Positions 1 through 63,739 of a DNA stretch of 64,000 nucleotides are shown here, piece after piece. The stretch lies in assembly GCA_963924565.1 (NCBI GenBank), contig OZ004607.1:24304001-24368000 (forward strand), read 5' to 3'. Position 1 is the first letter of the stretch, and every line of letters begins with the position of its first letter. The DNA comes from Ascidiella aspersa. Taxonomy: Eukaryota. Made by a program: the position numbers and the translations under genes. The notes under the pieces are model-generated. The model had not been told where the DNA came from, searched no databases, and saw only the letters and a list, made by a program, of their open reading frames with translations.

Positions 1-3000
1 CCCTGTCAACTGGCACGGCAATCATCGAAAGCGACGCCAGCGTCAGTGTGAGCGGAATGTCTGCTACTCCGGTTTTGTCCAGCTACTTGCCGAGCGATCC
101 CACCACGACCACTGAGGATTTCGCTGGTGGCGCACACGGCAGCTTGGGCGGCGGCTGGTATTCGGCCAAACGGCAGTGTATGACGTCACAGGGATCCTAC
201 AAGTCTCCAGCGATCTCGGGCTTCGCCGGAAGAGGTCTCGTGACGAGCAACGGAGGCTCGCGAATCAAGATCTCCGCGCATCATCTTGCCTTGGATGGAA
301 GCCTGCTCGCCAACGGCGCGGATGTCGTGCTAAAAACGTCCGAATTTCCGGCCGGTGACTCGCGAAGTGGCGCCGGGGCTGGATCCGGGGGCAGCATCTG
401 GATCGAGGTTTCCGGTCAGATCGACGGGCGCGGTCACATCTCGGCTGCTGGTGGCTCCTGTAAGATCAGCTCCTACTCACAGCTGACTGCTTCGGATCAG
501 TCGCGAATGGCGGCGATTGCGAACTCGCGTTGTGGAGCCGGAAGCGGAGGGCGTGTGGCTATTTACGCAAGTCACGATCACAACCAATACGTGGGAAGAT
601 TCTGGTAAGTTTGATTAAATCTCCAGATACTTTTTAACTTTCGGGTTTTAGATAAAGTGACTTCCAAATTATGTAAATAATGAAACATATAGGGAACATA
701 GGAACATAATGACTAAAGGTTGTAGTTAGACGTAACATTAGTATCAAAGAACACACAAGGCAGCTAGCACAAATGTTACAATGAATGTTTTTTTTTTAAT
801 ATTTAAAATATGCTACCTTCTTCTGTATGATCTTTGATACTCATTCTACGTCTAAACACAGAACAACAATATCAAAATATTGATAAAATTTATCAAATAA
901 AAGTAAATTTTTGTAAACTGATAAAATATTATTGGTATCAAATAAATATTGTTGGCAAATCGACATGTTACAAATGTAAATCGTAATTGTTATTCAATAC
1001 GTTATTTCTCATTAGCGTCGGTGGAGGAGGCTCTGGTGTAGTGACGTCAAGTTACTATGACAACACTCCTTCTGGACTTGGGGGAGGCCCCGGGTCAATA
1101 TACATATACGATTTAACGAAGAAGTACAAGAAACTCATTGTTGGAAACGACAACGAGCAAAAGCAGATCTGCTATCCGCTGATTGACGTCGACCTGACTG
1201 ACGTCCTGATTTTGGACGAGCTCTATTTGAACGACAGCTCAAGGTTGACCATGCTCGGGAGTGGTGGATCCAAAACGAGTAATTTGCAACTTCAAATTAA
1301 CGAAATGCTCGGTGATAGATCAGGTTGGTGTAATATTTATTTTTCTTAGAAAAAAAGAAGCAAGATCTAAAAGACAGTTTCTTAATATAAAATTCAAAGC
1401 AACAAAGAAGCATTGATTAACGAAATGCTCGGTGATCGGTGGTGTGGTTTAATATTTATTTTTCCATTGATAAAGCAAGGTCTAAAATACATTTTTTTAG
1501 ATAAACTTATAAAGTAACTTAGCAGCTTTATTTAATGAAATGCTCGGTAATCAGACAGGTTAATTTTTTGTAGTTTTAAAGCAAGGTCCAACTATTGATA
1601 TATTAATAAAAAAACATAGTAGCATTGAAGGCGAGTTACTTTGTTAGTAATTACACGGGAACCAAACAGTTATCTCTTTTTATAAGGTGTTCTTCACATA
1701 CTGGCAAACCACACCATCACGCTTCGGCCCGACACAAAGGGCAACGACACGAGCATCAAACCGCCAGTCAACTTCGAAGTGGAGCACGAGGGCGTGCTGA
1801 AGCTGGCCACGCATACGCACATCATAGGCACCGGTTCACCGGCGCTCAGGTTGGAGGGCGAGGTGCACGAAGTTCAGCACTTGGTTTTAGGCCAAGAAAC
1901 GCGCGCAGTTTTCGGTTCGACCGGCAGAATTGTTTCGGGTTCATCGGCGACATCTACAAAGCAGCAGTCGGATCTGCTGACCGGGCTCGTCGAACTTGCG
2001 AGCCTAACGCTTGACGCGGGCAGTAGGATGGAGTTCCCCAAAGACACCGGGGCCAGTCTGATTGCGAGTGATATAAGGATCAAGACCGCGGCCAAGATCA
2101 CGGCCGATTTCATGACGATCCAAGCCGGGAGTGTGCATACCGAACCCGGAAGCGTCATCACGTGTTCCGGGGTCGAAAGGTCTACTTCCAAGTCCCACGT
2201 TCAGTACGATGAGAGTTTGTCGGCTGAAGAAGGAGGCGGGCACGCCAGTGTCGGTGGATCTGGAAAGGTATTCTAACAATTAGAAAAAAATTAATCACGG
2301 CCAAAAAAATGCTATTTTCCCATCTACAGCCAGTTTATTTTTTAAGTTTCTTCTAGGTATATCGTTTGATGAAGGCCTGCTAAAAATACTGTTGTGATTG
2401 ACCGCGTTTGACACCGCATTTTTGTTATAGACAAATTGGTAATTATGCGTTATGACAGTGGTTTTCAACCTTTTATGGCTTGCGACACCACTTGCAAAAA
2501 AAAAATAATGAATAGATTGCGGCACACCTACAAGATTTTTCCGTAGGTGTAATTCACTAGAATGTCACAATAAACGAAACTGGAATGACACACGTCAACT
2601 CTACACAACGTAGGATGTTATAATTGGATTTATTCCACTCTAATCTTTCACAAAAAGTTGTAAGAGTTGAGCAAAAATTATCAAAGATTTTCAAATATCT
2701 CTCGGCACCCTCAAAGCACCCGATTGAGAACCACTGCGTTATGATAAAGAGCCAATCGTATTTAAATACAATCTCGCAATTATAGACTTTCTTAATAGTA
2801 CTTGTTTGGTTTACATTAAAAATTTTACTTACCTAGCCTTATATTCTTCTGCCCAGGATAGCGCAGGAGGAAAATTCCATGGATCAGTGCATTCTGCACA
2901 GGATTTTGGTAGCGCTGGTGGTAACCATGTTGCACAGCCGACTGGAACTCAGCCCAGTGGTGGGTTAGGCGGCGGTTACATTTCCATGATGGTGACTTCC

Positions 3001-51900: not shown

Positions 51901-54900
51901 GCTTCGACGCACTGCGAAGCTTGCGTGAGCGGATGGTTCGGACTGGACTGCACGGTGGCCACCTGCCCAGGTACGTAACTTGGTCCGACTTTGTTCTGAT
52001 CGACAATGCAAGCTTAAGTGCTATGTACAGACTATTCGGGAAATATGTTGTTTCTCGACTCGCTCGTTTCTGAGCCTGTGTAGCTCAGTTTGTAGAGCGA
52101 ACGTCCCGGTATGGCCGGAGGTCGTGAGTTCAAACCTCACTGCAGGCTAGATGTTTTTCTAGCCCGCCTTGCTTGCGTCTTTGATCGACAGATTCGTTTT
52201 TACTCTGCGATGGCTTTCGGTGTAATATTGATATGTAAGCCGTTATCGTTGGTCAAATAGCGACTTCAGAAGGGCTAGGTCAGAGAGTATATGTGTGACC
52301 TTTCATTCAACACCCGGAATATAACATTTTCGTGTTTTATTCTCATCTCGGAAGTTTATGTCCTAAAACAACTTCAATCATGTATTGTATCCCGTTTTTC
52401 ATCGTGTATATTGCGTTTTCGCAACAATATGCGTATTAAAACCTTTAATTATATTAACAAACTATATTGATTTTTCGTTGATAACAATTTTTCGTTTACA
52501 TTTGCAAAACACTTCTTGCAGTTTCACATGTTTGCGTTCCACAAAACACGAGCACACCTGCCACCACCAACCAGACGGAAAGCAGCGTACAGGATCAAAC
52601 GAGAAATACCTATGTTTCTCTTGCATTTTCCTCGTCCCATTTCACTACATTCGACGGGGCCTTGTACAATATGCAGGGAAGCGGAGACTACATACTCTAT
52701 CAAATGAAAGACTTCATTGTACAGGTATAGCATGGCAGTTACATGTGACAATTATTTAAACAACGTGCATTGTTTGTGTAGTGGGCAATTTGGAGTTAAG
52801 CCTTGCTTTTAAAGCCATGTTTTTGGTGGAAAACAGTAAATTCACATTTGTTTTTAGATCCGCACGGCCCCGTGCTATGGTTTGTCTGCTCCGTGTATCT
52901 CATCTGTTGCTGTCCAAGTCGACCAAAATGATGTCTTGATAATACAAGCAGGGTGCGTATTTTAATTCAATAACTTTTAATTGGTCTGGAAACGTTTTAA
53001 AATGCACTTTGTGTCAAATGCTTTGTTTCAAAATATATTTCAATGTACCATAACATCAGGTATAACGAAAAAGATGTCGACGGAGCGATTTGCATGAACG
53101 GCGAAACGTTGCTTGTCGGCGAAGGGGTGATAATAGGAGGAACTACCCAAGTAACACATCCTGCTGCAGGAAGCTACCATATCAGCCAGAACGACACAAA
53201 GGATGTTAATGGAACCGGATTCAGGTATTAATGATTATAGCGACGACGCAATTATCATAATGTCAGCTTTTAAATTTGTTATTACGAAAAATTGTCAACA
53301 CAAAGGAAAAAAATTACGATTATAAACAGGTTAAATAGTGGGTCAAGGATAATGTATCAGTTACCTTTTTTTTATGATATTCACATTGGAACATTTGTTT
53401 ACAGCCTGCAAGTACAAGTTGCCGGTCTTTATCTGAATTTAATGCTGAAAACGGGAAATGATCATTGCAAGGATGCGTCTGGTCTTTTCGTCTCGTGCAA
53501 CTCGGATCCTAAAGACGATTTCAAAACAAGCGACAACTTGGTATGGATATTGGATATGACAATTTTACGTTATTATTTTTAAGAATGAATAAACAGTCGG
53601 AACACCCGAGGATGTTGTTCTCTCTTCTATTAGGAGTCAGTTTCGATTTTAACGAAATTACAAGGGAATTTCTAAAACTTAACTTTTCCTATGTAAAAAC
53701 GCTTTTCAATGTCAAAATGTGACTTTTGAAAACTAACGTTTATGTTACACAAGCCTTGCGTTAAGCAGTTAAAATTTTTTTAACTTAAAAAGGAACAAAC
53801 CATATTTTATTCTTAACTTACCAAGTTCAATGACTATACGGTGCACGTATGCCGTAGCCATCCCTGCAAAGCAAAATGCTTTTTCTCATGCAGGATTTTG
53901 AACTCGACAAACTAACGCCGGAAGAAATCGGGCGCTTCACTGAGACCTGGAAGTCCTCCTATGGCGACAACGCGCCTTCGCTCTTCACTCAAACCTGTAG
54001 CGTCGCGTACAGGAGCCTCTCGCAGACCGGCTCCGACAACTGCCTCAAGCTTAACGGCTCCGTAATATCGACCAGCAACAAGCAGCCCTTCGTCGACTAC
54101 GACGTCACGTTTGAGTTCGACTTAAAAGCGTACGTCGGTGAGGAAGCGCAAGGCTGCTACGACGTGTTCCGTTACGTGCGCCTGGAAACGAAGATCGTTA
54201 AGCTGGTGGCCTGCGCCGACTCGCCCGGCCAAATGAACTTGCGCGTCACCTACGAGACCCAGGAAACGGCGAGCCTGACCGCCGAGCACGTGCTCCCCTT
54301 CAAAGTGCAGACCGGCGCCTGGTATCACATCGCGGTCACTTGGAAGAAGAACGACGCCCAGATGCAGGTAACCCCAATGGCCGTCTTGTAGTAGCTCACA
54401 AGGCATGTTTTCATTTCCAAATCGCTAATCTGTTTGTAAAGCGAGGGTGGTCAAAACCGAACATTTGGGTCACACGTGTCCTACAACCTTATTATCTTTC
54501 TCCCGCGGGACGTTAAATCTAAGCATTTTTTATTGGTCATCGTCGTATCATATCCACTTAGTTTAGAATTTAGAGCACATTTTTAATGTTTTAATACATC
54601 GTCTTACTTGCTTTTGGGAAACCATAAGGTCATGCACACTTGTATCCATAAGGTCATGCACACTTGTACATACGTTAAGTCGTTCTGTGCTTGCATCATC
54701 ATGCAGAGATAGATGGAGGCGAGAAATCTATGTCTGAATTTTAAACGACTGGTTGCGTGTTTTGATAGGGGGTATCGGTGTTCAAGCTTGCTTTGATTTT
54801 TGGCATCTTGATTTTCATTGGTGTAAATGCCTTTGTTCCACAATCGTGGGTGCGCGCGCAAATAACCGGGCATCTCTAATTTTACTACCTCCTCAGGTAA

Positions 54901-57900
54901 TTCTGTTTGACGCCGCGGATTCGGTCGGCTCTTTGTCGCGCCTGTCCTTCGCCGATCTGAAGGAGAACATCTTCGAGCCGGACGGTTCGATCGTGTTCGG
55001 TCAGTGGCGATCGCCAGCGGAGAACAAACCGCCATTCGTAATGTGGCTCGATGAGGTGCGAGTCTGGAACGTGGAACTGTCCAAGAGCGAAGTGCAGGGC
55101 AACATGCGTAAAGTGATCGAACCGTTTGAAAAGAACCTCGCCAGTCTGTGGACCTTCGCTACTGGTAATTTATCATGACAATTTAAGTTTGTTGTTTTTC
55201 CCTTTACTGATTACTTTCTATCTGTTGTTGTCCCATACTTCAATCGTATACAGTTTAAGGAGTACGTATGCTTATAAGGCAATAGTTAATAACGGTTTAG
55301 TAATCACCCTCTAATCATCCCCCGAAATGCAACCAACTCATATAAGGAAGGGCCCTAAAAACTGCCGCACACCCTTCAAACAGTAATCTTATGACAAATG
55401 TTAGGAAATTCTCCGAGATTCAGTGGTAAAATCAATGTTATTACAGCAAAGCTAGACTGGATGCATACATTCTTTACTCTTACTTCAACGTCTACTTATA
55501 GGTCAAGGAGAAATCGCCAAGGACTACGTTTCGGGCAACGACTTCAACATAATGGGTCGTGGTCGACCGCGTCCTGTGTGGACACGCTGCTCGCGTGAGC
55601 GCCTTGTCGAAGGGATGCAAATCAACGACGAGATCAACCCCAATACGAACGAAACCTTGGCCTCCGACGTTAGGTCTACATGCCAGGCCATGATTTACAG
55701 CCAGCAGTTGAACGACAGTTGTAGCAGCCTGGGCGCCGGCGTCGCGATGTACTTCTACCAGACTTGCGTGTCGGACTGCATGGGCGACGGTGGTCTGCGA
55801 CTGGCTTCTTCCTCTGTGGTGGCGTTTGCTGATTTCTGCCAGGTTGCCTTGTGTCTAACCACCTGGCCTTGTACTTCGTTGTGCGCGAGCATGCCACAGC
55901 TCATGGGATCCAGTTACCGCTGCCAGCTCTCCTACGACAATTCCTGCATTTCGGGCCAAACCAATGCCGAAGGTAAGAAACCATTGTTTTCCGGTTTGCT
56001 TTTCGTTAAACAGTCCTTGACATTACGTCACACAATAAAACGTAGTGACCTTCATGCAAGAAAAGGAAAAACTGTAAAAAAATGAAAGTTACCCCGCATG
56101 AACTGTACATTATTTAATGTATGGCGTGTAAAGTAATAATAGTTTTAGAGTTGTTAATATGCTTTATTTTTTTCTAGCAATGCGTGCTCTTTTAATTATC
56201 TATTCCTGTGCTTCTCAACCATTTTAACACAATTAAAATAGCTTAACGTCAAGTGGGAAGCGCCGGTTCAATGTACTTGAAATTCGCTACATGACAGAAA
56301 TCCAACATTAGATCCAACGGTATTTAAACTGTTCCGCCCATCCCTTCCTTGCAGGTGCCTGCGTGTGCTACAAGGGCTGGTACGGGCGCTCGTGCAGTCA
56401 ACAGTGTCCGGGTGGAGCGGCTAATGCGTGTAGCGGGGTGGGAACCTGCGACGCCGTCACCGGTCGCTGCTCGTGTCCAGTTAACTTCGACAAGTCGAGT
56501 CCCGACTGCTCGAGGTGCGCCGCCGGCTATGTGGGCTCGGATTGCAGCCTGTTTGCTGTCACCGCCAACGACACCCTTCAGCAAGTGACCTCGACCGCGT
56601 ACGGATACGGCGAGCATATCACTTTCGACGGATTGACTTATCGCCTGCCGACCGACGGCGAGTTCGTGATGCTGAATTCGACTGAACTGGGCGTTAATAT
56701 TCGCCAGGTAAAACTACTTATTCCTTGTTAGGAAGTCGGTCTGTTAAAGATTTTACAGGTTTAACACTAATGTATTTGTATAGTTATGCACAAAAAAATA
56801 TCTAAATAGTTGTCAATTTACTTATAGGTTTATACAAATTAACCGTATAGCTAGATATACGAGTGTTTCCCCAGGTTTACAATAAACTATGTGTATACCT
56901 TAGAATAACTTTTACCCGTTCAGTCGCAATATATGTTTATTTTTAGACTCGCTGGAGAAGAAGTGCTACTGATGAGCGAGAAACTCAGCAGGACCCACCT
57001 CTGTTTTCCATCAGTCAGGTTTCGATTTGCATTGGCAACTCCCAAGTTGTAATACACGTGCCTTACCCACAGACAGGCCTGCTCGAAAAGCCTTCCTCGT
57101 TTAACAGTTATGGCGAGCCAGAATACGATCCAGTGTTCTTTATAGACGGTAAGCAAACCAACATCCAAACTGGTTTGGAATCCGGTCTCAGTTTACCAGA
57201 CGGATCCAACATCACCCGCCTCTCGACCGTCTGGGTGGAAATCGTCAAAACTCACGAGAATCAAACAACCGCCAATAAGACCAAGTGCATAGTTCGCGTT
57301 TGCGTCAAGTCAACATTGCTCAACGTGTTTGTTACCATTGACAAGCCGGATAGGTACGGTGGACCCGCAGGTGCTGGAATACTCGACATACTTTCGCCTG
57401 GCCTAAGTGGAACACCTGACGATGACATTAACAACGACATCGTAGGACTAAATGGCGCTTACGTATGTGCGAGCTGTGCTTCGCAAACAGTAATTCTTAA
57501 CGACTTCAGTCAAGTGACTTCAATCAGCACGCATCCACATTCCACCTTCGTGTATCAGTATGGACCATATTACGAACCACGAGTCGGTACTGACGGTGGC
57601 AATTGCTTGTACTTTGGTCGTTTCGATGAGTTGGCCTCATGCAACCAAACATGCCGTGAAAAGGGTTACTTGAATGTCGAATTGGAACTGTCAGGATCGC
57701 TAGTTAGTCAGACAGACGACGTTGCCTTCGAATGCTACGTGAAATTGGCCCAATCCGGTTTCGGCGTTATTCTTTCATACCGGCCTCCACAAAGCGCAAC
57801 TGATCAGACCGGCTTTGATCTTGCTTGCGTCAACAACACGCTGGTTCTAGGCTGCGGCGGAACTTGGCTCGACACAGGAATAACGGTTTCAAGCTCAGAT

Positions 57901-60900
57901 GTTTTCCTCAATTGGGGACTGGTCGTTGTCAATTGTCAACGCGGTACGGGCGACGTTTGGATCAATTACGTCGCTTCAAGCGGATCCGTGTTTATTGGAA
58001 GAAAAATATCCGCTTCCGAGATCCGCGGGGCCGTAAACCTAATCGGCGGAGGTTCGTTGTGGTTCTTGCCTGGTGGAAACGTCACCCTTGGAGGAGCAAC
58101 TTTCTGGTCTGAAAACATCACCGGTTCAGTCGGCAATTCAGGATATTTGCTCCCATTCGTTGGCAGCATTGATGAGTGTCATTTATGGCGACGCACATTC
58201 ACTCGAACCGAATGCCAGCAGAACTTTGGGATCAAGTTTGGCGCGCAATCCTCTGTAGATGATAAGTCGCTCGCCGGAGTCTGGACTTTTGACGAAGGAG
58301 CTGGAGCAGTTTGCAAATGTTCCGCGACAGGTAACTCGCTCTTTTTCGAAGCTTCATAAGCATTAATTAACTTGTTAGTTTAAACCTAACTAACCAAAGC
58401 TATTTAAAGCTAGTTATATATAATCAGTCTGTGTTGCATTAATAACCAAACAATTCTCATTGTTTAGGATGTCCTGACATCCATATCTCGTACACGAACT
58501 CTAGAGGTGGTTCCGGAGGCTCTGGTGGTTCAGGAGGTTCAGGAGGTTCAGGAGGAACTGGCGGAAGCGGCGGATCCGGAGGAACCGGAGGCGGCTCTGG
58601 TGGGACCGGAGGCAGCTCTGGAGGTTCCGGAAGTGGTAGCGATTTATCTTCTGGCGTATATTGGACTCACTCGGATGCTCCGGTTGTAAAAGTTATCGCA
58701 GATCCGATTTCTCCTGACGACTGCGGATGTGAAGGGTGGGTAACTGCACTCTACAGAACAACGATTACTATTTGTTTTGTTTGTAATCACTTTGGAATAA
58801 CAGTTTAGAAAACAAAGTTAGTATACCACTATTAAACCTATTTATTTTCAATTAATAAAGTTATTTTTTTAAATACTTAAAAGTACGTTAAGATTTAACT
58901 TAAATATATATTATACATACCTTTCAAAACAGGCTAAAATGTAAGTCTAAGAGCCTATAACATATATTACAGATAAATTATTTAGGCTTGTGTATTAATC
59001 GGACGACAGGTGTACAGCATGGCTTTAATACTGCAGGGTCATGGAAAAGTCAAGAGATAGTGATTTCTTGTCAGATTATAAGGGCACTTTGTTTTTCAGG
59101 TCAATCAACATAGGGTTCAAAGCAATTACGGACTTCAACCAATTTAGGTTACGCGAGTGTGCTTACTTTCACAGACTTCCGTATTCACCGGTCTTGGTCT
59201 TCTGCAACAACGACACCACGTGGGCGAAGGAAGCCTGCGAGAGCGCCCTGACACCGATGATGAACAATCCATTTTGCAAAGAGGGTCTCGGCGAGAACCA
59301 GGACATCTTCATGGAGCAGTGTATGAGAGATGTTATCGCTCACAACGACACGGCCTGTGCCGCTCAACTTGCCGATTCATATATCGCAGTTTGTCGGTAC
59401 GTTTTTACTGTTTCCTAATCTATTGGCGCTTGTTTCAACTAATTTAGGGCTTGCAAAGTATTTAAACTGGAGTTTTGATATCTTCTGGCTTGCAAAGTAT
59501 TTAAACTGGAGTTTTGATATCTTCTGGCTTGCCAAGTATTTAAACTTGAGTTTTTTTATATATTCTGTGTATAGAACTCTCAGTTGTTCGTTTCAGATTC
59601 ACACTTGACCTCCCCGACCCGTGTATTTCGAACCCGTGCCAAAACGACGGCGTGTGCGACAAGCTGGACGGGGGCACGAGCTACCAGTGCAATTGCACTT
59701 GCGGCTGGAACGGAACGAACTGCGAAAACAACATCAGTAAGTTTTGCAGCGTCATTGGATATCGCAAAAGTTGCTAACCTTCGATTTTCTTCAGACGAGT
59801 GCGAAGTGCACCTGTGTCAGAACGGCGGAGAGTGCATCGACGAAATATGCGGTTATCATTGCGTCTGCCCAGCTGGGTATGCCGGTTTCTTCTGCCAAAC
59901 ACGTAAGAAAGCATAACATACTTTTTATCTTTATGGGGGACGAAGAAAATAAGTGAGATACATTCACTACTATTTTAAGGTACTGTAAGATACCATTAGC
60001 CCAACCATTTAGCCACCAACTTTTAAGTAACATTTTGTTGGAGAGCAGTAATTTTCGCAGATTCCAGTTAACAGCTGATGTCCGTGGCCCGGATTGGTTT
60101 CTTATATTCCATAAAACTACACGTTGGATTTACGTTGTGCTGTCCGAAACCTTTGTTTTTCCCAAGGCATAAGCGGTTGGTGTGTTTTTAACCAAAACAA
60201 AATGACGTTGCAGCTTGTATGAATGCGCTCGGAATGGAATGCAACGATATTCACAACGACCAGCTTTCCGCTTCTTCCGCATTAAAATACAGGATGTGGT
60301 TCTCATCGTGGTCAGCCGACAGGGCTCGTCTTAACCATTACGGATGGTGAGTGCTAGCACTCAACTTGACTGGGTTACGAACATTGTGCAGCTACAGTAT
60401 ATTCATTGAACACTGTGTAATTTGCTAAAACGTTAATTAGTTTTATGATTTCTTGTAATAATTTATTACGAATAAGTCGTAGTCTTTACTGGTGTATTTT
60501 TTATCTTTACATTTATACTTTATTCCTATACTTATGACAACAATTTTAGACTTGTTTTTAAACATTATATACTATCTACATTTAGTAGTCATTTTGGAAG
60601 ACTCGACTGAAAATTAGAAAAGAATGCTTGACTGCTTGTGTAAATTGGCGGGTCGCATGAAATTTAGCAAATGTTGGCTTTGCGAATAGTGATAACCCGA
60701 GAAAACCAATTAGCCTAACATTTCTTGGTTGTCTAGGGCAAATGCTTGGATACCTTCTGACGACGACTGGCAGCCCTGGATCCAAGTTTCCTTCTCCGAG
60801 ACAAAACGAATAACAGCTATCGCTACTCAGGTATTAGCTACTAAATCTCTACTTTTCACTTGTGCACTGATAACTCATTTTTTTATTGACAGTATAGTTC

Positions 60901-63661
60901 AGAGGTTCCCAAACTTTTTTATTCCGTGGCCTAATTTTATTTCATAAAACAGTTTGTGGCCCACCATTTGCCGTTAGGTTATTGTAATCCCAATTTATGC
61001 CTACATAGTCGGACAATTTCCCATTTAAAAACATTGATTCTAACAACATCCAAATAATCCATTTTTAGTTCCGGCTCATTTTAGATTGGAATTAAATATC
61101 TCGATAAAAACAAACTGAATTTAAAATTAAGTGCCGTGCTAACAGCGTAACGAAACAAACATATGTCGTGAGATTTTGCCTTTACGTATATAGTTTTCAA
61201 ATAGCCAACAAAATTGCCCCCTTTCTATTAGTATACCATATTTAGTTGCAATATTTGTAAATACCTCTATGGCCCAATGAAAATAGTCTTGTGGCCCAAA
61301 CTGTGGGCCATGGCCCCAAAACCCCTAGTATAGTTGATTCCCCCAAAAACATGACATTTTAAACTAATGTGTTTTTTTTAAAAGAGAGGATTAGTTTAGA
61401 TTAGAGTAAACAAGCCAAATGTTTGTGCAAACAATTCGAAACTTGTATACTTGGTAGGGGCGCACGTGGATATTTTTATTTCGATATGATTTGATTTTCC
61501 TTCTAACATAATTTTCCATGCATCGTTTTATCTTGATGCTTTATAATAGCCGAGGGGGTTTCTTACGTAAATAGTTACTGATTGTAATTTTTTTTTAACA
61601 AACTATATTACCATTTCCGAATTACAATGTTCCATTTTGGAGCATAATGGTTGGAGGTAGTAGTAAGATGTAATAAAAATACCAAAGCCCATACAGAAGT
61701 AGGTATCATTTGAACGTTTCGAATATATCTTCGCTCAGGGAGTTTACTACAATGGCTGTACTCCGTCGTGGATTACCAAGTACGAACTGCGCACAAGCGA
61801 CAATGCCACGCACTGGACCACTTACCCTAACAAGTTCGAGGGCAACTTCGACGACGAGTGCCCAGTTAAACGAGATGTTCTGCCTCTGGTTTCTGGACGA
61901 CATTTCCGAATCTACCCCCTCGAGTCCAACGAGAAACGAGCTTTGCGGTTTGAAATCTACGGTTGTCAAGCGTGTGGTGAGTACATGGGTTCACTTTACA
62001 CACATTAATTCTCTTGGTTTTATATAACCCATTAATCGTGTATTAGTGCTGTACTTTAACCCCGAACAATGTTCAATGTCAAGTCTTAAGTCATTTTCAT
62101 AGCAAACCAAATCAGCAATCAAAGTAAATAATATACACTATTTAAAATGATAACTTTTTTCCATTGTAAGAATTATTTTGCATCGCAAACACGTAAACAA
62201 ATAAATAGCAACCATACTTGCTTGCCTCGAATGTAATGAGTTAAAACCGTTACTTATTTTACCCATTTTGCCTAAGGGACAATTATTAAGTCCAAGGCCA
62301 TTCTTTTGTCCAAAAGAAACTTACGTCTAGGTATTTCAGATGAAGTACTAATAAGTCATATCATTTTAATACGGTGTCTTAGGTAACTAATTACAATGAT
62401 TCTTCGTTTTATGAATACAAAGTATAGCTTACGCTAATGCGAAATCCGTTCTTTTAAGCTGAGGCCAGGCACTGTTAAACGACGTTTCAATCACTAAAAT
62501 TGTTATAGATTGCTGTGACCCTCTGGGTGTGGAAAGTTGTGAGGTTTGGGACAGTCAAATGAGCGCCTCGTCGACATACGGTCTGCGTTGCAGCACCTGC
62601 TCCAGCTACAGAGCTATGTATGCCCACAACGCGCGACTGCATTATGGCACGTTTTTTGGAAAAGGTTGGATGCCTGCTTCAGGCGACGCAGAACCCTGGC
62701 TCCAAATAGATTTCGTGCTCCAGAAGAACATAACCGGTGTCATTACACAAGGTCAGCATTTTGATTGGCATTTCGCTATTTTTTACATGTTTAAAAAAAT
62801 CGTTTAGATTGCCAAACATACAAAATATCAAGCTGTTAAGGTTTTGATGTAAATAACCGCTGAAAATGTAATCTAACTGAGAACAAAAACTCGAGTAGTT
62901 ATATTAAAAAAACAATACTTTAAGTCAGTTATAATCTTGTTAATGTAGTTTATTAATATTTCGTTGAACGTTGTGTGTAACTTAAGTTGTTTAGTTATCG
63001 CATACCATACCGGTAATGCAATATATTTGATTTTTACCCTTAGGCGGCCAGTATCGATGGAAACGATCCTATGTGAAAACATTTAACGTGTCCTTCAGTT
63101 CCGATGGCGGGAATTGGACAATGATGAACGAGGTACCTACGCCATACATTAAGTTCTTCGTTGTTTTTCATTTATACAAATGATACTCTACTGCCAAAGT
63201 TGACATAACGGAGTCAATTTTTGTGACAAAATAACATGTTTGGAAAACAAATGACAAATTTTACAAAATAAACGCATAACCGTATAGCATTTCGAACAGA
63301 ACTACTCATAGGTCCTTCGATATAGAGGCGAAGTATACCTACAGTTTCTAATCTGTTTTACAATGCAAGACAATATTGCGTTTTGACATTAGAACATGTT
63401 ATTAATTTTTCTGACACACAATCACAAAAAACACTGTTACAGACGTTCGAGGGAAACACGGACTGCTCAGGCACAACGAAGACAACGTTCGAGCGGGCCT
63501 TCATCGCACGGTACATTCGAATCCACACGATATCATCCGTGGGAGGCGGTGCCCTGAGACTCGAGGTTCTCGGATGTCGCCCTCTTAAACCCGTCAAACC
63601 CAAGAGCAATGTCGACAGTTACCCGGACAGCGACGGCAACTCCTTTTTGCCACCTTACTAA
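1..63661 (+). CDS. Giant multi-exon, probably secreted extracellular protein, 5'-partial, >8,400 aa: Gly-rich repeats, EGF array, 2x(VWD-LamG-C8-like), EGF-EGF-F5/8C-F5/8C
   Basis: Hand-traced GT-AG exons with compatible phases: 1-604,1016-1323,1687-2267,2857-3098,3361-3490,3581-4338,4515-4714,5177-5350,6275-6456,7067-7383,7784-7941,8066-8219,8402-8655,9089-9319,10302-10543,10864-11147,11464-11672,11812-12023,12132-12284,12348-12489,12742-12868,13014-13110,13332-13522,13869-13977,14051-14190,14271-14351,14591-14803,14955-15072,15694-15850,16196-16300,17104-17302,17758-17922,19352-19480,19670-19838,20304-20493,20821-21009,21314-21481,21732-21914,22182-22423,22485-22685,22965-23231,23451-23592,23672-23776,24024-24200,24273-24360,24562-24804,24933-25188,25687-25819,26262-26681,26932-27074,27547-28125,28623-28780,29061-29217,29419-29665,29773-29970,30636-30817,31393-31696,31938-32295,32548-32871,32945-33151,33222-33307,33666-34478,34697-35541,35630-35780,35845-35964,36110-36231,36652-36841,37655-37896,38678-38845,39587-39820,40184-40343,40758-40926,41834-41958,42267-42476,43017-43267,43647-44145,44725-44898,45303-45569,45963-46139,46834-46998,47442-47603,48315-48536,49123-49296,49672-49820,50392-50492,50617-50761,50991-51202,51276-51399,51727-51970,52522-52724,52858-52952,53060-53224,53405-53540,53894-54367,54897-55164,55502-55972,56355-56707,56947-58330,58468-58735,59175-59396,59597-59736,59795-59902,60214-60346,60737-60830,61739-61976,62509-62751,63044-63132,63443-63661. 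The sum is 25,400 nt; minus 2 leading nt this is 8,466 whole codons including the stop. Repeat motifs continue across junctions. Individual boundaries may be off by a few nt. Confidence 0.88.
711..870. mobile_element. Palindromic MITE-like repeat; related single arms at about 9531-9580 and 61639-61687
   Basis: Arms tagacgtaacattagtatcaaaga (727-750) and tctttgatactcattctacgtcta (831-854). The motif ggagcataatggttggaggt.gtagtaaga.gtaataa recurs in two other introns. Confidence 0.55.
1296..1630 (+). repeat. Three degenerate tandem copies (about 115-120 bp) starting in the last codons of exon 2
   Basis: ttaa[c/t]gaaatgctcggt at 1297, 1417 and 1532, each followed by aagcaag.tc.aa. Confidence 0.8.
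2456..2736. mobile_element. Non-autonomous hAT (Buster/Charlie-like) MITE
   Basis: TIR CAGTGGTTTTCAA / TTGAGAACCACTG with a perfect 8-bp TSD CGTTATGA on both sides. Confidence 0.9.
3165..3328. repeat. 40-bp minisatellite, 4 copies
   Basis: Unit tgataaagatttatttgtgctattttaaaaattagtattc. Confidence 0.92.
4881..5150. mobile_element. Truncated copy of the AAGTC-rich hAT-like MITE (full copy at 30062-30439)
   Basis: Starts CAGTGTAGTAA, has many AAGTCA subterminal repeats, and shares tgttaaactatt.aaattg.taaact.gt with the 30 kb copy. Confidence 0.7.
6488..6899. mobile_element. Degenerate hAT-like MITE
   Basis: CAGTGTTTGGCAAAC / GTTTGCCGACCACAG ends with GCGGCC subterminal motifs. No TSD retained. 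Confidence 0.6.
8700..9088 (+). repeat. Two degenerate tandem copies (period about 225 bp), each with a hammerhead-like core
   Basis: aatact[a/g]atgaagacta...gtagg..ttgaaa.cgttgta...gtaaagcaa...attctaaactgtttcgga occurs twice. Confidence 0.75.
9675..10130. mobile_element. Non-autonomous hAT MITE
   Basis: Perfect 16-bp TIR CAGGGGTTCCCAACCT / AGGTTGGGAACCCCTG. Flanks ctatatgc and cagaatatgc form an imperfect TSD. Confidence 0.85.
10681..10866 (+). repeat. Tandem duplication (period about 125 bp) including the 3' splice-site region
   Basis: gcctaaagagtagcctactttgt...tgattatgctaaa...tctgattt occurs at 10681 and 10806. Confidence 0.8.
16337..17070. mobile_element. Long-TIR (foldback/Mutator-like) element filling most of intron 30
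   Basis: Inverted arms 16450-16499 and 16930-16979 (gcaccgctt.gaacaaaaa.ca...ttataatat) with weaker outward extension and a purine-rich core. Confidence 0.55.
17599..17702. mobile_element. About 104-bp palindromic MITE; related arms at about 5540-5600 and 36888-36960
   Basis: TAAGACTGTTTATAAAAACAAATAAAACATAAAACCATTTCTTA / TAAGAAATGATTTTATGTTTTTTCTGTTTTCATAAACAGTCTTA. Confidence 0.75.
18012..19155. mobile_element. Non-autonomous hAT element, host of a nested insertion
   Basis: Perfect 16-bp TIR CAGGGGTTCCCAACCT, GTGGTACGCG subterminal repeats at both ends, perfect TSD CTTTATAA (18004-18011 and 19156-19163). Confidence 0.93.
18430..19079. mobile_element. Nested hAT MITE inside 18012-19155
   Basis: TIR CAGTGGTTCTTAACC / GGTGAAGAACCACTG (14/15), GGGGGCGC subterminal motifs, flanks ttctacaa and taatacaa (6/8). 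Confidence 0.85.
19903..20197. mobile_element. Degenerate hAT-like MITE
   Basis: Right end GTTTTGTAACCCCTG, decayed left end, GCGGGCC/GCGGTCC motifs, and ctctaaa on both flanks. Confidence 0.5.
25929..26179. mobile_element. PIF/Harbinger (Tourist)-like MITE
   Basis: About 30-bp TIR GTCCCGTTTACACTACCGCAGCGCTGAGGT / ACCTCAGTTCAGCTGTAGTGTGAACGGGCC, TAA on the left flank, internal TTCACGCTTTGCT repeats. Confidence 0.7.
27248..27520. mobile_element. hAT-like MITE
   Basis: TAGTGGTTCTCAAA / TTTGGGAATCACTG with flanks gtataaag and gtataagt. Confidence 0.75.
28156..28530. mobile_element. CGATAC-rich hAT-like MITE, family copy 1
   Basis: Colinear with 38008-38399 (gatacc.atacccg.tattttggacaaaa.tatcgc.atcc; aaattgaaacattaaaag; cgcaaatcatgg.tg.aatt.ttgtat; acgagta.cgatactac). 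Confidence 0.75.
30062..30439. mobile_element. AAGTC-rich hAT-like MITE, full copy
   Basis: Perfect 11-bp TIR CAGTGTTGTAA / TTACAACACTG, TSD gtaccaaa and gtaccaac (7/8), many CAAGTCA subterminal repeats. Confidence 0.88.
34109..50761 (+). CDS. Segment: tenascin/teneurin-type EGF array (about 55 modules, about 1,870 aa)
   Basis: Repeated CxxHGxC...CxCxxG[WY]xGxxC pattern. Twelve CPGxPDC-type markers near 34975, 35368, 35958, 37728, 39637, 40868, 42470, 43829, 44829, 46058, 47573, 49266. Confidence 0.9.
37062..37168. repeat. Near-perfect interrupted palindrome (hairpin)
   Basis: Outer arms 37062-37086 and 37144-37168 match 24/25; inner arms 37089-37098 and 37129-37138 match 10/10. Confidence 0.88.
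37432..37615 (+). mobile_element. Dispersed about 184-bp repeat with internal tRNA-like core (37459-37532), copy 1
   Basis: A box TAGCTCAGTTGG, D stem GCTC/GAGC, T stem GTGAG/CTCAC, acceptor GCCTGTG/TGCAGGC. Aligns end to end with 52047-52229. Confidence 0.8.
38008..38399. mobile_element. CGATAC-rich hAT-like MITE, family copy 2
   Basis: Ac-like ends TAGGGAT / ATCCCTA, CCGATA subterminal repeats, homologous to 28156-28530. Confidence 0.78.
39010..39085. mobile_element. Orphan right end of a hAT MITE
   Basis: CGCGGACCCC twice followed by AGTTTAAGAACCACTG. No matching left TIR found. Confidence 0.55.
41153..41806. mobile_element. Degenerate hAT-like element
   Basis: CAGGGGTGAAAGT / AGTTTCAGCACTG with flanks cttaaact and tctaaact (6/8). 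Confidence 0.55.
42508..42779. mobile_element. Degenerate hAT-like MITE
   Basis: CAGTTGTTTTCAAACT / AGTTTGAGAAAAACTG with TGCGT[TC]GC-type subterminal motifs. Confidence 0.6.
44121..44493 (+). repeat. 172-bp tandem duplication of an exon 3' end, its donor site and the intron start
   Basis: tactgcgacgaaccgg(g)ttgcccag|gta at 44121 and 44293, followed by aagtagcatcaagtaacaagt...aagtttcaatgttacctttacacgc in both. Confidence 0.92.
45663..45752 (+). mobile_element. Internally deleted copy of the tRNA-core repeat
   Basis: ggtcccggtatgaccgga.tcgtgag...gcaggctagttgtttttctagcctgaccttgcttgc matches the copies at 37.4 kb and 52.0 kb. Confidence 0.75.
46296..46533 (+). mobile_element. Possible SINE/LINE 3' fragment with a (CCTTTA/CTTTA)n tail
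   Basis: GC-richer about 190-bp intronic block ending in ccctttaccctttaccttactcttactttctttactttc. Single copy in the window. Confidence 0.35.
47967..48235. mobile_element. CGATAC-rich MITE, family copy 3 (degenerate)
   Basis: tagtggtgtctgatacttg...cgcgatccgacgcgatacc...ttattactatg...gtatcgaat...acgagtaccgata. Confidence 0.55.
48751..49085. mobile_element. Degenerate hAT-like MITE
   Basis: Left end CAGTGTTCCCTCT with TGCGCA subterminal motifs at both ends. Right TIR decayed. Confidence 0.45.
50991..51399 (+). CDS. Segment: about 110-aa non-EGF beta-rich domain (PLVNC...WFGYNN...GPSNHF...GQVTQFYPG...VFSV...HWYL)
   Basis: Two exons (50991-51202, 51276-51399) in frame between EGF modules. The motif string resembles an unnamed domain of bacterial secreted proteins (from recall, not searched). 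Confidence 0.6.
51727..55900 (+). CDS. Segment: cassette 1, EGF/laminin-EGF, VWD, LamG/pentraxin-like, C8-like
   Basis: VWD: HFTTFDGALYNMQGSGDYIL and SGLFVSCNSDPKDDF...FTETWK. LamG-like: WYHIAVTW, GSIVFGQ, LDEVRVWNVELS, LASLWTF. C8-like: CQAMIYSQQLNDSC...YFYQTCVSDC...VVAFADFC. Confidence 0.75.
52047..52229 (+). mobile_element. Dispersed about 183-bp repeat with internal tRNA-like core (52074-52147), copy 2
   Basis: B box GAGTTCAAACC inside a perfect GTGAG/CTCAC stem. Colinear with 37432-37615 including 27 nt upstream and about 82 nt downstream of the core. Confidence 0.8.
54622..54668. repeat. 24-bp perfect tandem duplication
   Basis: ccataaggtcatgcacacttgta(t) twice. Confidence 0.9.
55920..59396 (+). 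CDS. Segment: cassette 2, EGF/laminin-EGF, VWD, LamG/pentraxin-like, C8-like
   Basis: CPGGAANACSGVGTC parallels CPGGGFNPCFGHGTC of cassette 1. VWD: HITFDGLTYRLPTDGEFVML. LamG-like: FVGSIDECHLW, LAGVWTFDEGAG. C8-like: AKEACESAL...PFC...FMEQCMRD...ADSYIAVC. Confidence 0.72.
58506..58640 (+). repeat. Coding 9-bp tandem repeat encoding a (GGS/GGT)n linker of about 45 aa
   Basis: GGSGGSGGSGGSGGSGGTGGSGGSGGTGGGSGGTGGSSGGSGSGS in exon 58468-58735. Confidence 0.85.
59448..59556. repeat. 39-bp minisatellite, about 2.8 copies
   Basis: Unit ggcttgcaaagtatttaaactggagttttgatatcttct. Confidence 0.92.
59597..59902 (+). CDS. Segment: two Notch-type EGF domains, the second with a Ca-binding consensus
   Basis: DPCISNPCQNDGVC...YQCNCTCGWNGTNCE and NINECEVHLCQNGGECIDEICGYHCVCPAGYAGFFCQ. 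Confidence 0.88.
60214..63661 (+). CDS. Segment: two F5/8 type C (discoidin) domains and C-terminus
   Basis: First: CMNALGME...QLSASS...ARLN...NAW...PWIQVSF...ITAIATQG...FEGNFD...RIYP...LRFEIYGC. Second: CDPLGVE...QMSASS...ARL...PWLQIDF...ITGVITQG...YVKTFNVSFSSDG...FEGNTD...ARYIRI...LRLEVLGC. Stop TAA at 63659-63661. Confidence 0.92.
60900..61327. mobile_element. hAT MITE with damaged right TIR
   Basis: Left CAGAGGTTCCCAAAC, right ...AACCCCTA, GTGGCCC subterminal motifs, perfect TSD GTATAGTT. Confidence 0.85.
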
Positions 63662-63733: not shown

Positions 63734-63739
63734 AATAAA
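63734..63739 (+). promoter_or_regulatory. Candidate polyadenylation signal AATAAA
   Basis: AATAAA 73 nt after the stop codon, followed by a GT/T-rich tract (gtttgttgttttcttgtg) about 20-35 nt downstream. Confidence 0.6.

What the first reader, a model, noticed from the sequence alone, without database searches (positions are those of the whole stretch)
1..63661. One >8,400-aa extracellular mega-protein with a domain architecture I cannot match to a named protein
Seen: 108 exons splice into one open frame of about 8,465 aa (roughly 0.9 MDa) with the N-terminus still missing and no transmembrane or obvious GPI tail. Known: VWD plus C8 plus F5/8C occur together in insect hemolectin/hemocytin and SCO-spondin; long EGF rods occur in tenascin and teneurin; EGF-EGF-C1-C2 is lactadherin. 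None of these has the Gly-rich repeat half or the LamG inserts. Inference: a polarised tether with a multivalent N-terminal head array, a long EGF rod, a polymerisation or lectin module and a membrane-binding tip. It is a candidate for an undescribed invertebrate adhesive, matrix, mucus-net or clotting system. Automated pipelines would probably split it or label it tenascin-like.
Basis: partly seen in the sequence, partly recalled or inferred. Interest (0 to 1): 0.88.

Follow-up and report, generated by a model that had tools for sequence, protein, structure and literature searches.

The report
Tail of a 2-MDa secreted protein gene
The window holds the last 8,500 amino acids of what appears to be one enormous secreted protein gene of a sea squirt (about 19,000 amino acids in all, starting 85 kb upstream); relatives exist, unnamed and split into pieces, in many marine invertebrates, and nobody seems to have described them.

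Summary

The architecture is largely confirmed:
- ten ~455-aa Gly-rich modules with no Pfam or NCBIfam family, predicted as right-handed beta-solenoids;
- about 49 teneurin/tenascin-type EGFs;
- a small beta domain;
- two paralogous EGF-VWD-LamG-Cys-rich cassettes;
- EGF-EGF-F5/8C-F5/8C, with no TM segment.

New here: the frame continues upstream in module register to an ATG with a signal-peptide-like stretch at -84,860. That gives a gene of about 148.5 kb, about 238 exons and 17-19 thousand aa (about 2 MDa).

The architecture is not unique. Collinear but fragmented "uncharacterized", "TENX-like" or "Tenascin-X" models exist in Ciona, hemichordates, echinoderms, amphioxus, bivalves, an annelid and a sea anemone. 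A pearl-oyster model keeps the order modules, EGF rod, beta domain, cassettes and ends in a TM anchor.

My reading is a giant secreted filament or tether whose C-terminal end lies near the cell. No RNA evidence could be obtained. The scan's other notes on this stretch (s1-801814, s1-802275, s1-802163, s1-802363) agree.

The parts
1..63661 (+). Last 109 coding exons (8,505 aa) of the giant gene. Stop codon at 63659-63661. The first exon continues 224 nt upstream of the window.
   Evidence: Own gene model. The full exon list is in notebook entry 3.
1..34090 (+). Ten tandem Gly-rich modules of about 430-475 aa (16% Gly, 0.9% Cys). Anchor motif GG.GGR[IVL] at 3437, 6403, 10355, 12804, 16246, 21779, 24326, 27742, 31462 and 33884. 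Predicted beta-solenoid.
   Evidence: Self-BLAST period of 450-475 aa with 30-50% identity. Anchors. No Pfam or NCBIfam family. AF2 models with pLDDT 89 and 86. VIA-align: EtpA Z 14.0, Awp1 Z 12.4.
27547..28125 (+). Largest single exon inside a module (193 aa). Used as the search and fold query.
   Evidence: phmmer gave 334 relatives. AF2 pLDDT 86.3. Weak VIA matches to PPII-bundle antifreeze proteins, Z 6.2 and 5.4.
33666..34478 (+). Bridging exon. The end of the last Gly-rich module and the first teneurin-type EGFs lie in one open exon.
   Evidence: Pfam EGF_TEN, EGF_Teneurin and EGF_2 at residues 144-269 of the same 270-aa exon that begins with GGSGGS/GG.GGR motifs.
34090..50761 (+). EGF rod of about 1,890 aa with 294 Cys, or roughly 49 EGF-like domains. 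Teneurin/tenascin type, with laminin-type EGF at 49672-49820.
   Evidence: Pfam on 13 exons. Cys count. 40-50% identity to Ptychodera XP_070533134.1.
50991..51399 (+). Small Cys-poor beta domain (111 aa, two exons) between EGF modules. No family match.
   Evidence: No Pfam hit. The same domain sits at the same place in Pinctada P0201, where residues 3143 and 3144 run on across the 50761/50991 junction.
51727..56354 (+). Cassette 1. EGF pair (51727-51970), VWD (52522-53540), LamG_3-like domain (53894-55164), Cys-rich C8-like end (55502-55972).
   Evidence: Pfam VWD E 2e-5, LamG_3 hits at 16.8 and 15.5 bits on consecutive profile parts, weak RGM_C. VWD C-terminal exon recovered. 37% identity to P0201 over the whole cassette.
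56355..59396 (+). Cassette 2, a paralog of cassette 1. EGFs plus the VWD start in one exon (56355-56707). A 461-aa exon with the rest of VWD plus LamG (56947-58330). A (GGS)n linker (58468-58735). A C8-like end (59175-59396).
   Evidence: BLASTP of cassette 1 against cassette 2, E 2e-19 and 5e-6. ESM Atlas: 24 of 30 nearest clusters are Laminin_G_3, score 0.96. No direct Pfam or PDB sequence hit for the 461-aa exon.
59597..59902 (+). Two EGF domains, one per exon.
   Evidence: Pfam EGF E 7e-4 and hEGF E 1e-7.
60214..63661 (+). Two F5/8C (discoidin) domains, exons 60214-61976 and 62509-63661, followed by a 25-aa hydrophilic tail.
   Evidence: Pfam F5_F8_type_C. Profile positions 24-53 and 57-127, then 3-53, 55-80 and 86-127, collinear over six exons. 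No hydrophobic tail.
63734..63739 (+). AATAAA polyadenylation signal 73 nt after the stop codon.
   Evidence: Pattern search in script.

Best explanation
The window contains the C-terminal 45% of one very large secreted, non-membrane extracellular protein gene of an ascidian.

Gene extent: it appears to start at an ATG with a signal-peptide-like stretch 84,860 bases upstream of the window and to end at 63661. That is about 148.5 kb, about 238 exons and 17-19 thousand aa, or about 2 MDa.

Domain order from N to C:
- signal peptide;
- a short first module;
- F5/8C;
- about 30 tandem Gly-rich beta-solenoid modules, the last ten of which lie in the window;
- about 49 teneurin/tenascin-type EGFs;
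- a small beta domain;
- two EGF-VWD-LamG-Cys-rich cassettes;
- EGF-EGF-F5/8C-F5/8C.

Shown: the continuous frame, the domain content, the predicted solenoid fold of the modules, and collinear homologs in other phyla.

Inferred: the modules stack into a stiff rod some hundreds of nm long, extended by the EGF rod. The VWD/Cys-rich cassettes give disulfide-linked multimerisation or matrix binding. The C-terminal discoidin pair holds the molecule at the producing cell's surface, on lipid or glycan. This puts the discoidin pair in the place of the transmembrane anchor found at the equivalent end of the pearl-oyster homolog. The protein would then be a cell-surface-proximal filament or tether of the apical extracellular matrix, for example between epidermis and tunic or in a mucus or adhesive layer. 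It would be analogous in principle to Drosophila Dumpy or to PKHD1L1 coats.
For: One frame with 109 GT-AG exons.

Domain classes are joined within single exons: 33666-34478 and 56355-56707.

None of the exons after the doubtful junctions offers a start codon with a signal peptide.

The Pinctada P0201 protein (7,318 aa) is collinear at 37% identity over 2,553 columns, through the EGF rod, the beta domain and cassette 1. It runs unbroken across 49296/49672 and 50761/50991.

Ptychodera XP_070533134.1 is collinear at 40% identity across the boundary between modules and EGF rod.

The upstream chain stays in module register back to -84.8 kb, with an ATG and a hydrophobic leader at -84,860. The F5/8C domain sits about 265-400 aa from that start, matching residues 256-386 in Saccoglossus XP_077861759.1, which has a clear signal peptide.

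The Saccoglossus models P0038 and P0166 end and begin on consecutive exons of the tunicate gene, at -41,367 and -40,833. Both are reported on a contig of 288,578 nt.

Ciona LOC104266654 maps collinearly from -72.0 to -46.4 kb and is cut in mid-module at both ends.

Fold: pLDDT 89.4 and pTM 0.87. The best VIA-align matches are adhesin beta-helices: EtpA Z 14.0, Awp1 Z 12.4, Awp14 Z 11.9.

P0201 has a TM segment and a cytoplasmic tail. The tunicate has no TM segment.

A stop codon followed by AATAAA closes the gene, and a convergent unrelated gene lies downstream.
Against: No transcript evidence of any kind was obtainable. Continuity therefore rests on reading frames, splice consensus and other genomes' gene predictions, which are themselves computational.

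The chainer has no intergenic state apart from an ATG start, so it is biased toward joining exons.

The upstream model used a homology bonus and may read through a few in-frame introns. The total length is uncertain by about 2,000 aa.

The signal peptide at -84,860 contains an Arg in its hydrophobic core and shows no significant BLAST match to hemichordate N-termini.

Tunicates use operons and SL trans-splicing, so a hidden boundary cannot be formally excluded.

The function is pure inference. No expression, localisation or binding data exist.

C8 was not detected by Pfam. The VWD of cassette 2 is seen only through its paralogy to cassette 1.
Confidence: 0.6

Rival explanations
1. Two or more tandem paralogous genes rather than one. 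For example, an N-terminal gene of the Saccoglossus LOC144342564 / Ciona LOC104266654 type, followed by a second gene that contains the window. They might be transcribed as an operon, or from an internal promoter such as the ATG at -258 just before the window's first exon.
For: NCBI models in Saccoglossus, Ptychodera and Mya are separate loci on one scaffold or chromosome. An in-frame ATG followed by MQVHLLLCLLVG lies 34 nt upstream of the exon that opens the window. No RNA data are available. Tunicate operons are known (general knowledge).
Against: Every proposed break falls in mid-module with no stop codon, and the next exon continues the module in register. The -258 'leader' is simply the translated polypyrimidine tract of a good acceptor (score 3.0), which is matched by a strong donor at -314 (score 3.7) in a compatible phase. 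The split database models lack signal peptides at their starts and lack natural ends.
Confidence: 0.2
2. A gel-forming or net-forming secreted polymer (mucus net of the pharynx or endostyle, adhesive, or clot) rather than a cell-anchored tether. The VWD/Cys-rich cassettes would drive mucin- or VWF-like disulfide multimerisation, and the discoidin domains would bind glycans of prey, particles or matrix.
For: VWD with a C8-like region is the multimerisation unit of mucins, VWF and hemolectin (established knowledge). The domains are present here. Most taxa found with homologs are ciliary-mucus suspension feeders or users of temporary adhesion. There is no TM segment.
Against: There are only two VWD cassettes. 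No TIL, CTCK or mucin-like PTS domains were seen. The oyster homolog is membrane-anchored. The taxon distribution comes from a capped hit list, not a survey.
Confidence: 0.25
3. The beta-solenoid modules are carbohydrate-active or carbohydrate-binding units, acting on tunic cellulose, sulfated glycans or hyaluronan-like polymers, as in the G8/PbH1 proteins CEMIP and TMEM2 or in bacterial lyases. The giant protein would then be a matrix-remodelling scaffold.
For: Right-handed beta-helix matches include pectate lyases, galacturonases, tailspike depolymerases and the TMEM2 ectodomain at Z 8-9. The echinoderm and bivalve homologs carry a G8 domain, PF10162.
Against: The best matches are adhesins, not enzymes. 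The enzyme matches lie in the Z 8-9 range, which the tool itself calls common for repeat folds. No catalytic motif was identified. Thirty tandem copies fit a structural role better. No G8 domain was found in this gene.
Confidence: 0.1

Closest known systems
Uncharacterised predicted homologs: Pinctada imbricata FSP39_005732 (7,318 aa), Mya arenaria 'TENX-like protein', Ptychodera flava XP_070533134.1, Saccoglossus XP_077861759.1 and LOC100369350, Ciona intestinalis LOC104266654, Patiria miniata LOC119725183 ('Tenascin-X' in UniRef)
   Same: They share the same Gly-rich module family at 35-61% identity. The order modules, teneurin-type EGF rod, beta domain, EGF-VWD-LamG cassettes is the same in Pinctada. 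F5/8C lies near the N-terminus in the hemichordates, as in the upstream part of this gene.
   Different: All are unstudied computer models, and most are cut in mid-module. Pinctada has more cassettes and ends in a TM segment plus a cytoplasmic tail instead of EGF-EGF-F5/8C-F5/8C. Some carry a G8 domain, which was not found here.
Bacterial and fungal beta-helix adhesins (EtpA TPS domain 8cpk, Candida glabrata Awp1 7o9q, autotransporter passengers)
   Same: The predicted right-handed beta-solenoid fold of the module (VIA-align Z 14.0, 12.4 and 10-11). They are also extracellular, rod-like and adhesive in context.
   Different: There is no sequence relationship (8-17% identity). Foldseek finds nothing at E<=0.001. 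The animal modules have long Gly-rich segments in each rung, are tandemly repeated about 30 times, and are fused to EGF, VWD, LamG and discoidin domains.
Drosophila Dumpy, and PKHD1L1 / fibrocystin-type giant apical-matrix proteins
   Same: Multi-MDa extracellular filament made of hundreds of small modules (EGF in Dumpy, beta-helix/G8 in PKHD1L1). A cell-proximal C-terminus is proposed here.
   Different: There is no ZP domain, DPY module, TM segment, IPT or TIG here. The resemblance is functional analogy recalled from general knowledge and was not tested.
Lactadherin (MFG-E8) / Del-1 / EDIL3
   Same: The C-terminal EGF-EGF-F5/8C-F5/8C arrangement.
   Different: Those are proteins of 400-500 aa. 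Here the arrangement is the last 420 aa of a far larger chain. Lipid binding was not tested.
Hemolectin/hemocytin, SCO-spondin, sea-star Sfp1
   Same: VWD, EGF and discoidin domains occur together in a large secreted invertebrate protein.
   Different: Those proteins have TIL, C8, TSR or LDLa arrays and no beta-solenoid modules or teneurin-type EGF rod. The sea-star footprint paper (PMC9382459) mentions no tenascin-like or beta-helix component.
Glycine-rich PPII/polyglycine-II bundle domains (springtail antifreeze proteins, phage S16 gp38, ALK/LTK GlyR domain)
   Same: The Gly-rich stretches are predicted with high confidence but have no DSSP strand or helix. The window's own exon model is closest to 7jjv (Z 6.2, 104 residues aligned) and 2pne (Z 5.4). 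gp38 also appears in the list.
   Different: These Z values are below the level the tool calls meaningful. ALK did not appear. Pfam Gly_rich did not match. This is a lead only.

Membership tests
Tenascin (the name carried by database relatives: 'TENX-like', 'Tenascin-X') | N-terminal assembly domain with heptad repeats, followed by tenascin EGFs, FN3 repeats and a C-terminal fibrinogen globe | tested here: not met
   Only the EGF type matches (EGF_Tenascin 22 bits; EGF_Teneurin, EGF_TEN). No FN3 or fibrinogen hit appeared in any exon scanned. The C-terminus is a discoidin pair.
Teneurin | Type II membrane protein with eight EGFs followed by NHL, YD-shell and Tox-GHH domains | tested here: not met
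   The EGF_TEN and EGF_Teneurin profiles match the rod. There is no TM segment, and no YD or NHL hit appeared in any exon scanned.
VWD-C8 multimerising proteins (mucins, VWF, hemolectin, SCO-spondin) | VWD domain | tested here: met
   PF00094 at 25.3 bits against a cutoff of 22.9 on exon 52522-52724. The VWD C-terminal motif lies in exon 53405-53540. Cassette 2 is paralogous.
VWD-C8 multimerising proteins (mucins, VWF, hemolectin, SCO-spondin) | C8 and TIL domains directly after VWD; CTCK or PTS regions | tested here: inconclusive
   No Pfam C8, TIL or CTCK hit. There is a Cys-rich stretch with a C8-like spacing, but it follows an inserted LamG domain (by eye). Scanning exon by exon lowers sensitivity.
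Laminin_G_3 / ConA-like lectin superfamily | Match to the LamG_3 profile | tested here: met
   Two exons match consecutive profile parts (52-93 and 120-151; 16.8 and 15.5 bits, each below the 27.6 cutoff). ESM Atlas: 24 of 30 nearest clusters are PF13385, score 0.96. The homologs P0010 (41.9 bits) and P0201 (precomputed PF13385 and PF02210) also carry it.
Lactadherin/Del-1-type tail | EGF-EGF-F5/8C-F5/8C order at the C-terminus | tested here: met
   Pfam on eight consecutive exons.
Lactadherin/Del-1-type tail | Phosphatidylserine or membrane binding by the C2 spikes; an RGD motif in the second EGF | not testable with these tools
   RGD motifs occur at model residues 956, 1581, 4941, 5107 and 5796, none of them in the terminal EGFs. 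Lipid binding needs an assay.
Right-handed parallel beta-helix (pectin-lyase-like fold) | Stacked three-faced beta rungs forming a solenoid | tested here: met
   The AF2 model of one full module of the homolog P0016 has pLDDT 89.4 and is all-beta. VIA-align gives Z 14.0, 12.5, 12.4 and 11.9 to EtpA, Awp1 and Awp14. This is a prediction, not an experiment, and Foldseek found nothing significant.
PPII / polyglycine-II helix bundle domains (ALK GlyR, snow-flea AFP, gp38) | A lattice of Gly-rich left-handed PPII helices | tested here: inconclusive
   Best VIA matches for the window exon are 7jjv at Z 6.2 and 2pne at Z 5.4. Foldseek E>1. Model coordinates could not be inspected. There was no Pfam Gly_rich hit.

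The most novel reading that the evidence does not exclude
A single protein of about 19,000 aa and about 2 MDa, which would be among the largest secreted animal proteins. It would be conserved from cnidarians through bivalves, annelids, echinoderms, hemichordates, amphioxus and tunicates; no vertebrate or arthropod relative appeared in the (capped) hit lists. It would be built from about 30 copies of an undescribed domain that combines a beta-solenoid with stacked polyglycine-II-like segments. It would form a previously unrecognised class of apical-matrix filament or tether in marine invertebrates.
Probability: 0.35. Interest if true: 0.8.

Novelty: new variant of a known kind. Interest (0 to 1): 0.66.

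Why it matters
If it is one gene, this would rank among the largest animal protein-coding genes by product size. It defines a conserved family that current annotation hides by cutting it into 'uncharacterized' or 'tenascin-like' fragments.

Its repeating unit has no Pfam or NCBIfam model. That unit would bring the bacterial-adhesin type of beta-solenoid, possibly with a rare polyglycine-II element, into animal extracellular matrix biology.

The hit lists showed it in many marine, mostly filter-feeding or temporarily attaching phyla and in no vertebrate or arthropod. This points to a matrix, mucus or adhesion structure lost in those lineages. It also offers a concrete candidate for the molecular basis of tunic attachment, mucus nets or bioadhesion.

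Practically, it is a warning for gene-count and orthology studies in these genomes.

Tried and rejected
1. Pfam and NCBIfam on the Gly-rich exons gave nothing. The only row was a chance-level AgmC hit at 18 bits against a cutoff of 275. ALK-type Gly_rich (PF12810) was expected from memory and was not found.

2. Foldseek against the PDB found no match at E<=0.001 for either model.

3. A sequence search of the PDB with the 461-aa and 156-aa cassette exons gave nothing.

4. The search for homologous proteins with the 461-aa exon gave nothing in its length band. The tool's length band excludes long relatives.

5. Five micro-exons (18015-18030, 19013-19065, 19205-19210, 20131-20148, 49359-49373) were rejected as artefacts of the chainer, because the flanking exons join directly in frame. 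The oyster protein also runs on without them.

6. A gene end at -46.39 kb, suggested by the C-terminus of the Ciona model, was rejected. The module continues in register on the next exons and there is no terminal exon.

7. A gene start at about -70.9 kb, at the Ciona model's N-terminus, was rejected. That model begins in mid-module with no signal peptide, and the exons upstream match it.

8. An internal start at -258 is judged to be a translated polypyrimidine tract.

9. An alternative TM-bearing 3' exon downstream was looked for and none was found.

10. An alignment of cassette-1 exons to the 461-aa exon for folding was too poor to use. The second fold job went to the window's own module exon instead.

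11. Literature searches for the locus names, for giant ascidian ECM proteins and for beta-helix/EGF/discoidin giants found no description.

The joined (spliced) protein was never sent to any database, family or fold tool. Those searches were done exon by exon, by reference. The joined model was assembled only inside scripts, to check the frame and for local BLAST against proteins the tools had already returned.
Full report
**Observation.** The window is G000:C1:24304001-24368000 (+) of a 308.6-Mb genome. Earlier notes of this scan take the genome for an ascidian. That fits the 50-83% identity I find to a Ciona intestinalis protein.

It uses codon log-odds and GT/AG weight matrices, both trained iteratively on the window, and allows no in-frame stops. 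It returned a single + strand chain from base 1 to a stop at 63661: 111 exons and 8,318 aa. With a bonus for homology between repeat modules it returned 114 exons and 8,498 aa.

Five micro-exons were artefacts. The donor/acceptor pairs 17922/19352, 19838/20304 and 49296/49672 join directly in frame. The oyster homolog also runs on unbroken across 49296/49672. A 7-nt exon was replaced by 53405-53540, which encodes the recognisable C-terminal part of a VWD domain and fits both neighbours in phase.

The final model has 109 exons, 8,505 aa and 0.897 MDa. All introns are GT-AG. Median exon length is 189 nt and median intron length 310 nt. The same parameters score 2,223 on the + strand and 292 on the reverse complement. 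That control is biased, because the parameters were trained on the + strand. No TM-like segment is present, and AATAAA follows the stop by 73 nt.

**Domain content inside the window.**
- *Gly-rich modules.* Residues 1 to about 4,630 are ten tandem units of about 430-475 aa. Self-BLAST shows a period of 450-475 aa with 30-50% identity. The anchor motif GG.GGR[IVL] occurs ten times. No exon of these units matches Pfam or NCBIfam.
- *Bridging exon.* Exon 33666-34478 contains the last Gly-rich motifs and, in the same open exon, teneurin-type EGFs.
- *EGF rod.* The rod runs to 50761 and has 294 Cys in 1,892 aa, about 49 EGFs. It matches EGF_Teneurin, EGF_TEN, EGF_2 and EGF_Tenascin throughout, and laminin-type EGF at 49672-49820.
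- *Beta domain.* A Cys-poor 111-aa domain (50991-51399) has no family.
- *Cassettes.* Two paralogous cassettes follow (E 2e-19 and 5e-6). Each has EGFs and a VWD; cassette 1 scores 25.3 bits against a cutoff of 22.9. Each then has a ConA-like LamG_3 domain. Two exons hit consecutive parts of that profile, and the ESM Atlas gives 0.96 with 24 of 30 nearest clusters LamG_3 for the 461-aa exon. Each ends in a Cys-rich stretch that looks C8-like by eye but has no Pfam hit. In cassette 2 the EGFs and the VWD start share one exon.
- *Tail.* The tail is EGF, hEGF and two F5/8C domains. Their profile coordinates run collinearly over six exons, which supports those splices.

**The Gly-rich module.** phmmer with exon 27547-28125 against 1.84 billion representative proteins found 334 relatives. 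Sixteen had E<=1e-30, and many had 3-9 matched stretches.

A 610-aa relative (P0016; 36% identity to the window's modules, E 5e-68) covers more than one full module. With a 44-row alignment, AlphaFold2 gave pLDDT 89.4 and pTM 0.87, all-beta. Foldseek found nothing at E<=0.001. VIA-align against 48,161 PDB representatives gave right-handed beta-helix adhesins at the top:
- EtpA secretion domain: Z 14.0, rmsd 4.0 over 214 residues.
- EtpA: Z 12.5.
- Candida Awp1: Z 12.4.
- Awp14: Z 11.9.
- Pet, Vag8 and IcsA: Z about 10.

The window's own 193-aa exon folds with pLDDT 86.3. Its Gly-rich stretches are confident but have no DSSP strand or helix. Its best VIA matches are the PPII-helix-bundle antifreeze proteins 7jjv (Z 6.2, 104 residues aligned) and 2pne (Z 5.4), and phage gp38 also appears lower in the list. 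These values are below the level the tool calls meaningful, and Foldseek agrees only weakly. A polyglycine-II element is therefore a lead, not a finding. The known classes of such bundles are listed in bioRxiv 10.1101/2023.11.25.568672. Another first-reader note on this stretch (s1-801814) proposed the same mixed fold.

**The gene does not start near the window.** I fetched 140 kb upstream. The chain of module-bearing exons continues on the + strand, with no minus-strand matches, back to -84.8 kb. From -85 to -107 kb the chainer finds only noise. An unrelated LRR gene lies at -137 to -134 kb.

At -84,860 an ATG opens MFMPKGRVAFWLGILIRLVVNTVSVEA in the same open stretch as the first module exon. 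A 1,221-aa exon (-78,679..-75,015) carries an F5/8C domain (E 3e-8). It lies about 265-400 residues from that ATG. In Saccoglossus XP_077861759.1, which has an obvious signal peptide, F5/8C is at residues 256-386. BLAST of the first exon against the Ptychodera N-terminus was not significant.

The whole-gene model from that ATG has 238 exons, 19,159 aa and 2.0 MDa over 148,522 bases. It used a homology bonus and may read through a few in-frame introns, so I quote 17-19 thousand aa.

**Is it one gene?**

For:
- Every place where a database model of another species ends or begins falls in mid-module here, with the next exon continuing the module.
- The Ciona LOC104266654 model (3,181 aa) maps collinearly from -72.0 to -46.39 kb. 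It begins with '...GDDTGYLHIPP' and has no signal peptide. It ends where the tunicate sequence simply goes on.
- Saccoglossus XP_077861759.1 ends at the exon ending at -41,367. Saccoglossus LOC100369350 ('LOW QUALITY PROTEIN') starts at the next exon, at -40,833. Both are reported on a contig of 288,578 nt.
- Ptychodera XP_070533134.1 crosses the boundary between modules and EGF rod at 40% identity over 1,975 columns.
- Pinctada FSP39_005732 (7,318 aa) aligns at 37% over 2,553 columns, through the EGF rod, beta domain and cassette 1. Its residues run on across 50761/50991.
- A scan for ATG plus hydrophobic leader in front of all exons found only the leader at -258. That is the translated polypyrimidine tract of a good acceptor, paired with a strong donor at -314.

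Against:
- All of this is computational.
- The chainer favours joining exons.
- Tunicates have operons.
- No RNA evidence could be obtained.

I put about 0.9 on the window part being one gene and about 0.65-0.7 on the whole 148.5 kb being one gene.

**Relatives and novelty.** A search seeded with the Saccoglossus protein lists long relatives in:
- Ciona, Saccoglossus and Ptychodera;
- Patiria, Asterias, Diadema and Lytechinus;
- Branchiostoma;
- Mactra, Mya, Mytilus, Potamilus, Solemya and Pinctada;
- Owenia and Actinostola;
- Salpingoeca rosetta.

Weaker, short matches to bacterial beta-helix proteins also appear. Names given by the sources are 'uncharacterized', 'hypothetical', 'TENX-like protein' and 'Tenascin-X'. 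The ESM Atlas places the module among 'hypothetical protein' clusters with no Pfam family, mostly molluscan. Literature searches found no description. The architecture is therefore not unique to this animal, but it belongs to an unnamed and unstudied family whose members are mis-split.

**Mechanism (inferred).** The modules are predicted solenoids of the kind that make stiff extracellular rods in microbial adhesins. About 30 in tandem plus about 49 EGFs would give a filament hundreds of nm long. VWD with a Cys-rich partner is the disulfide-multimerising unit of mucins and VWF (established knowledge). Discoidin C domains bind lipid or glycan in lactadherin and factors V and VIII (established knowledge).

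The oyster homolog has, after its last C8-like region, a TM segment (about residue 6,850) and a 440-aa cytoplasmic tail. The tunicate has the EGF-EGF-F5/8C-F5/8C tail in that position and no TM exon downstream. I therefore read the C-terminus as the cell-proximal end and the solenoid array as the distal part. On this reading the protein is a secreted apical-matrix filament or tether.

The rivals are a free gel or net polymer, a glycan-active scaffold, and a split into several genes.

**Limits.** The joined protein was never submitted to a search or fold tool. Exon-by-exon scanning lowers sensitivity for domains split by introns, such as C8, TIL and the cassette-2 VWD. The joined model was used only inside scripts, for frame checks and for local BLAST against proteins already returned by the tools.

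Noticed in passing
window 695-860: An intronic stretch of about 160 nt matches dozens of places on many contigs of the same genome at 70-92% identity, on both strands. It is probably a short interspersed or MITE-like repeat.
   Followed up: no
window 17989-18228 and 9580-9774: Two introns share an open stretch that translates to '...GSQPV(V/G)(R/L)...'. This looks like another dispersed repeat. It misled the exon chainer into calling micro-exons.
   Followed up: partly
window 58470-58733: Cassette 2 contains a run of about 45 residues of pure (GGS/GGT)n, coded without a simple DNA tandem repeat being obvious. It is probably a flexible linker between the LamG domain and the C8-like end, and it is absent from cassette 1.
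   Followed up: no
L009 (window +70.8 to +71.7 kb), minus strand: Open stretches resemble a polypeptide GalNAc-transferase ('...DPIRAPTMAGGLFAVKKSFFAKIGTY'). This would be a convergent neighbouring gene that bounds the giant gene downstream.
   Followed up: no
L017 (window -137 to -134 kb), plus strand: A leucine-rich-repeat protein gene lies here, and other unrelated coding stretches lie at -131 to -127 kb. About 20 kb with no convincing exons (-107 to -85 kb) lies between them and the giant gene's start.
   Followed up: no
L007:1549-2412 (window -48,453 to -47,588): An exon in the upstream part carries a domain of about 130 aa ('...ALSEVEVYADG') with a weak Laminin_N hit (E 0.036). It looks like a galactose-binding-like jelly roll inserted between modules.
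   Followed up: partly
protein P0010 (JGI metagenome contig of 14,196 nt) and P0048 (15,480 nt): Intronless ORFs of 4,300-4,700 aa on short metagenome contigs carry the same modules. P0010 also has LamG_3 and teneurin-type EGFs. The source organism (protist, bacterium or virus) is unknown, which raises the question of where the module family arose.
   Followed up: no
protein P0201 (Pinctada imbricata), residues about 6,850-7,318: The oyster homolog ends in a Cys-rich TM segment ('...IILCMTLICCCCCWYH') and a long, low-complexity, acidic cytoplasmic tail. The family therefore has both membrane-anchored and secreted forms.
   Followed up: partly
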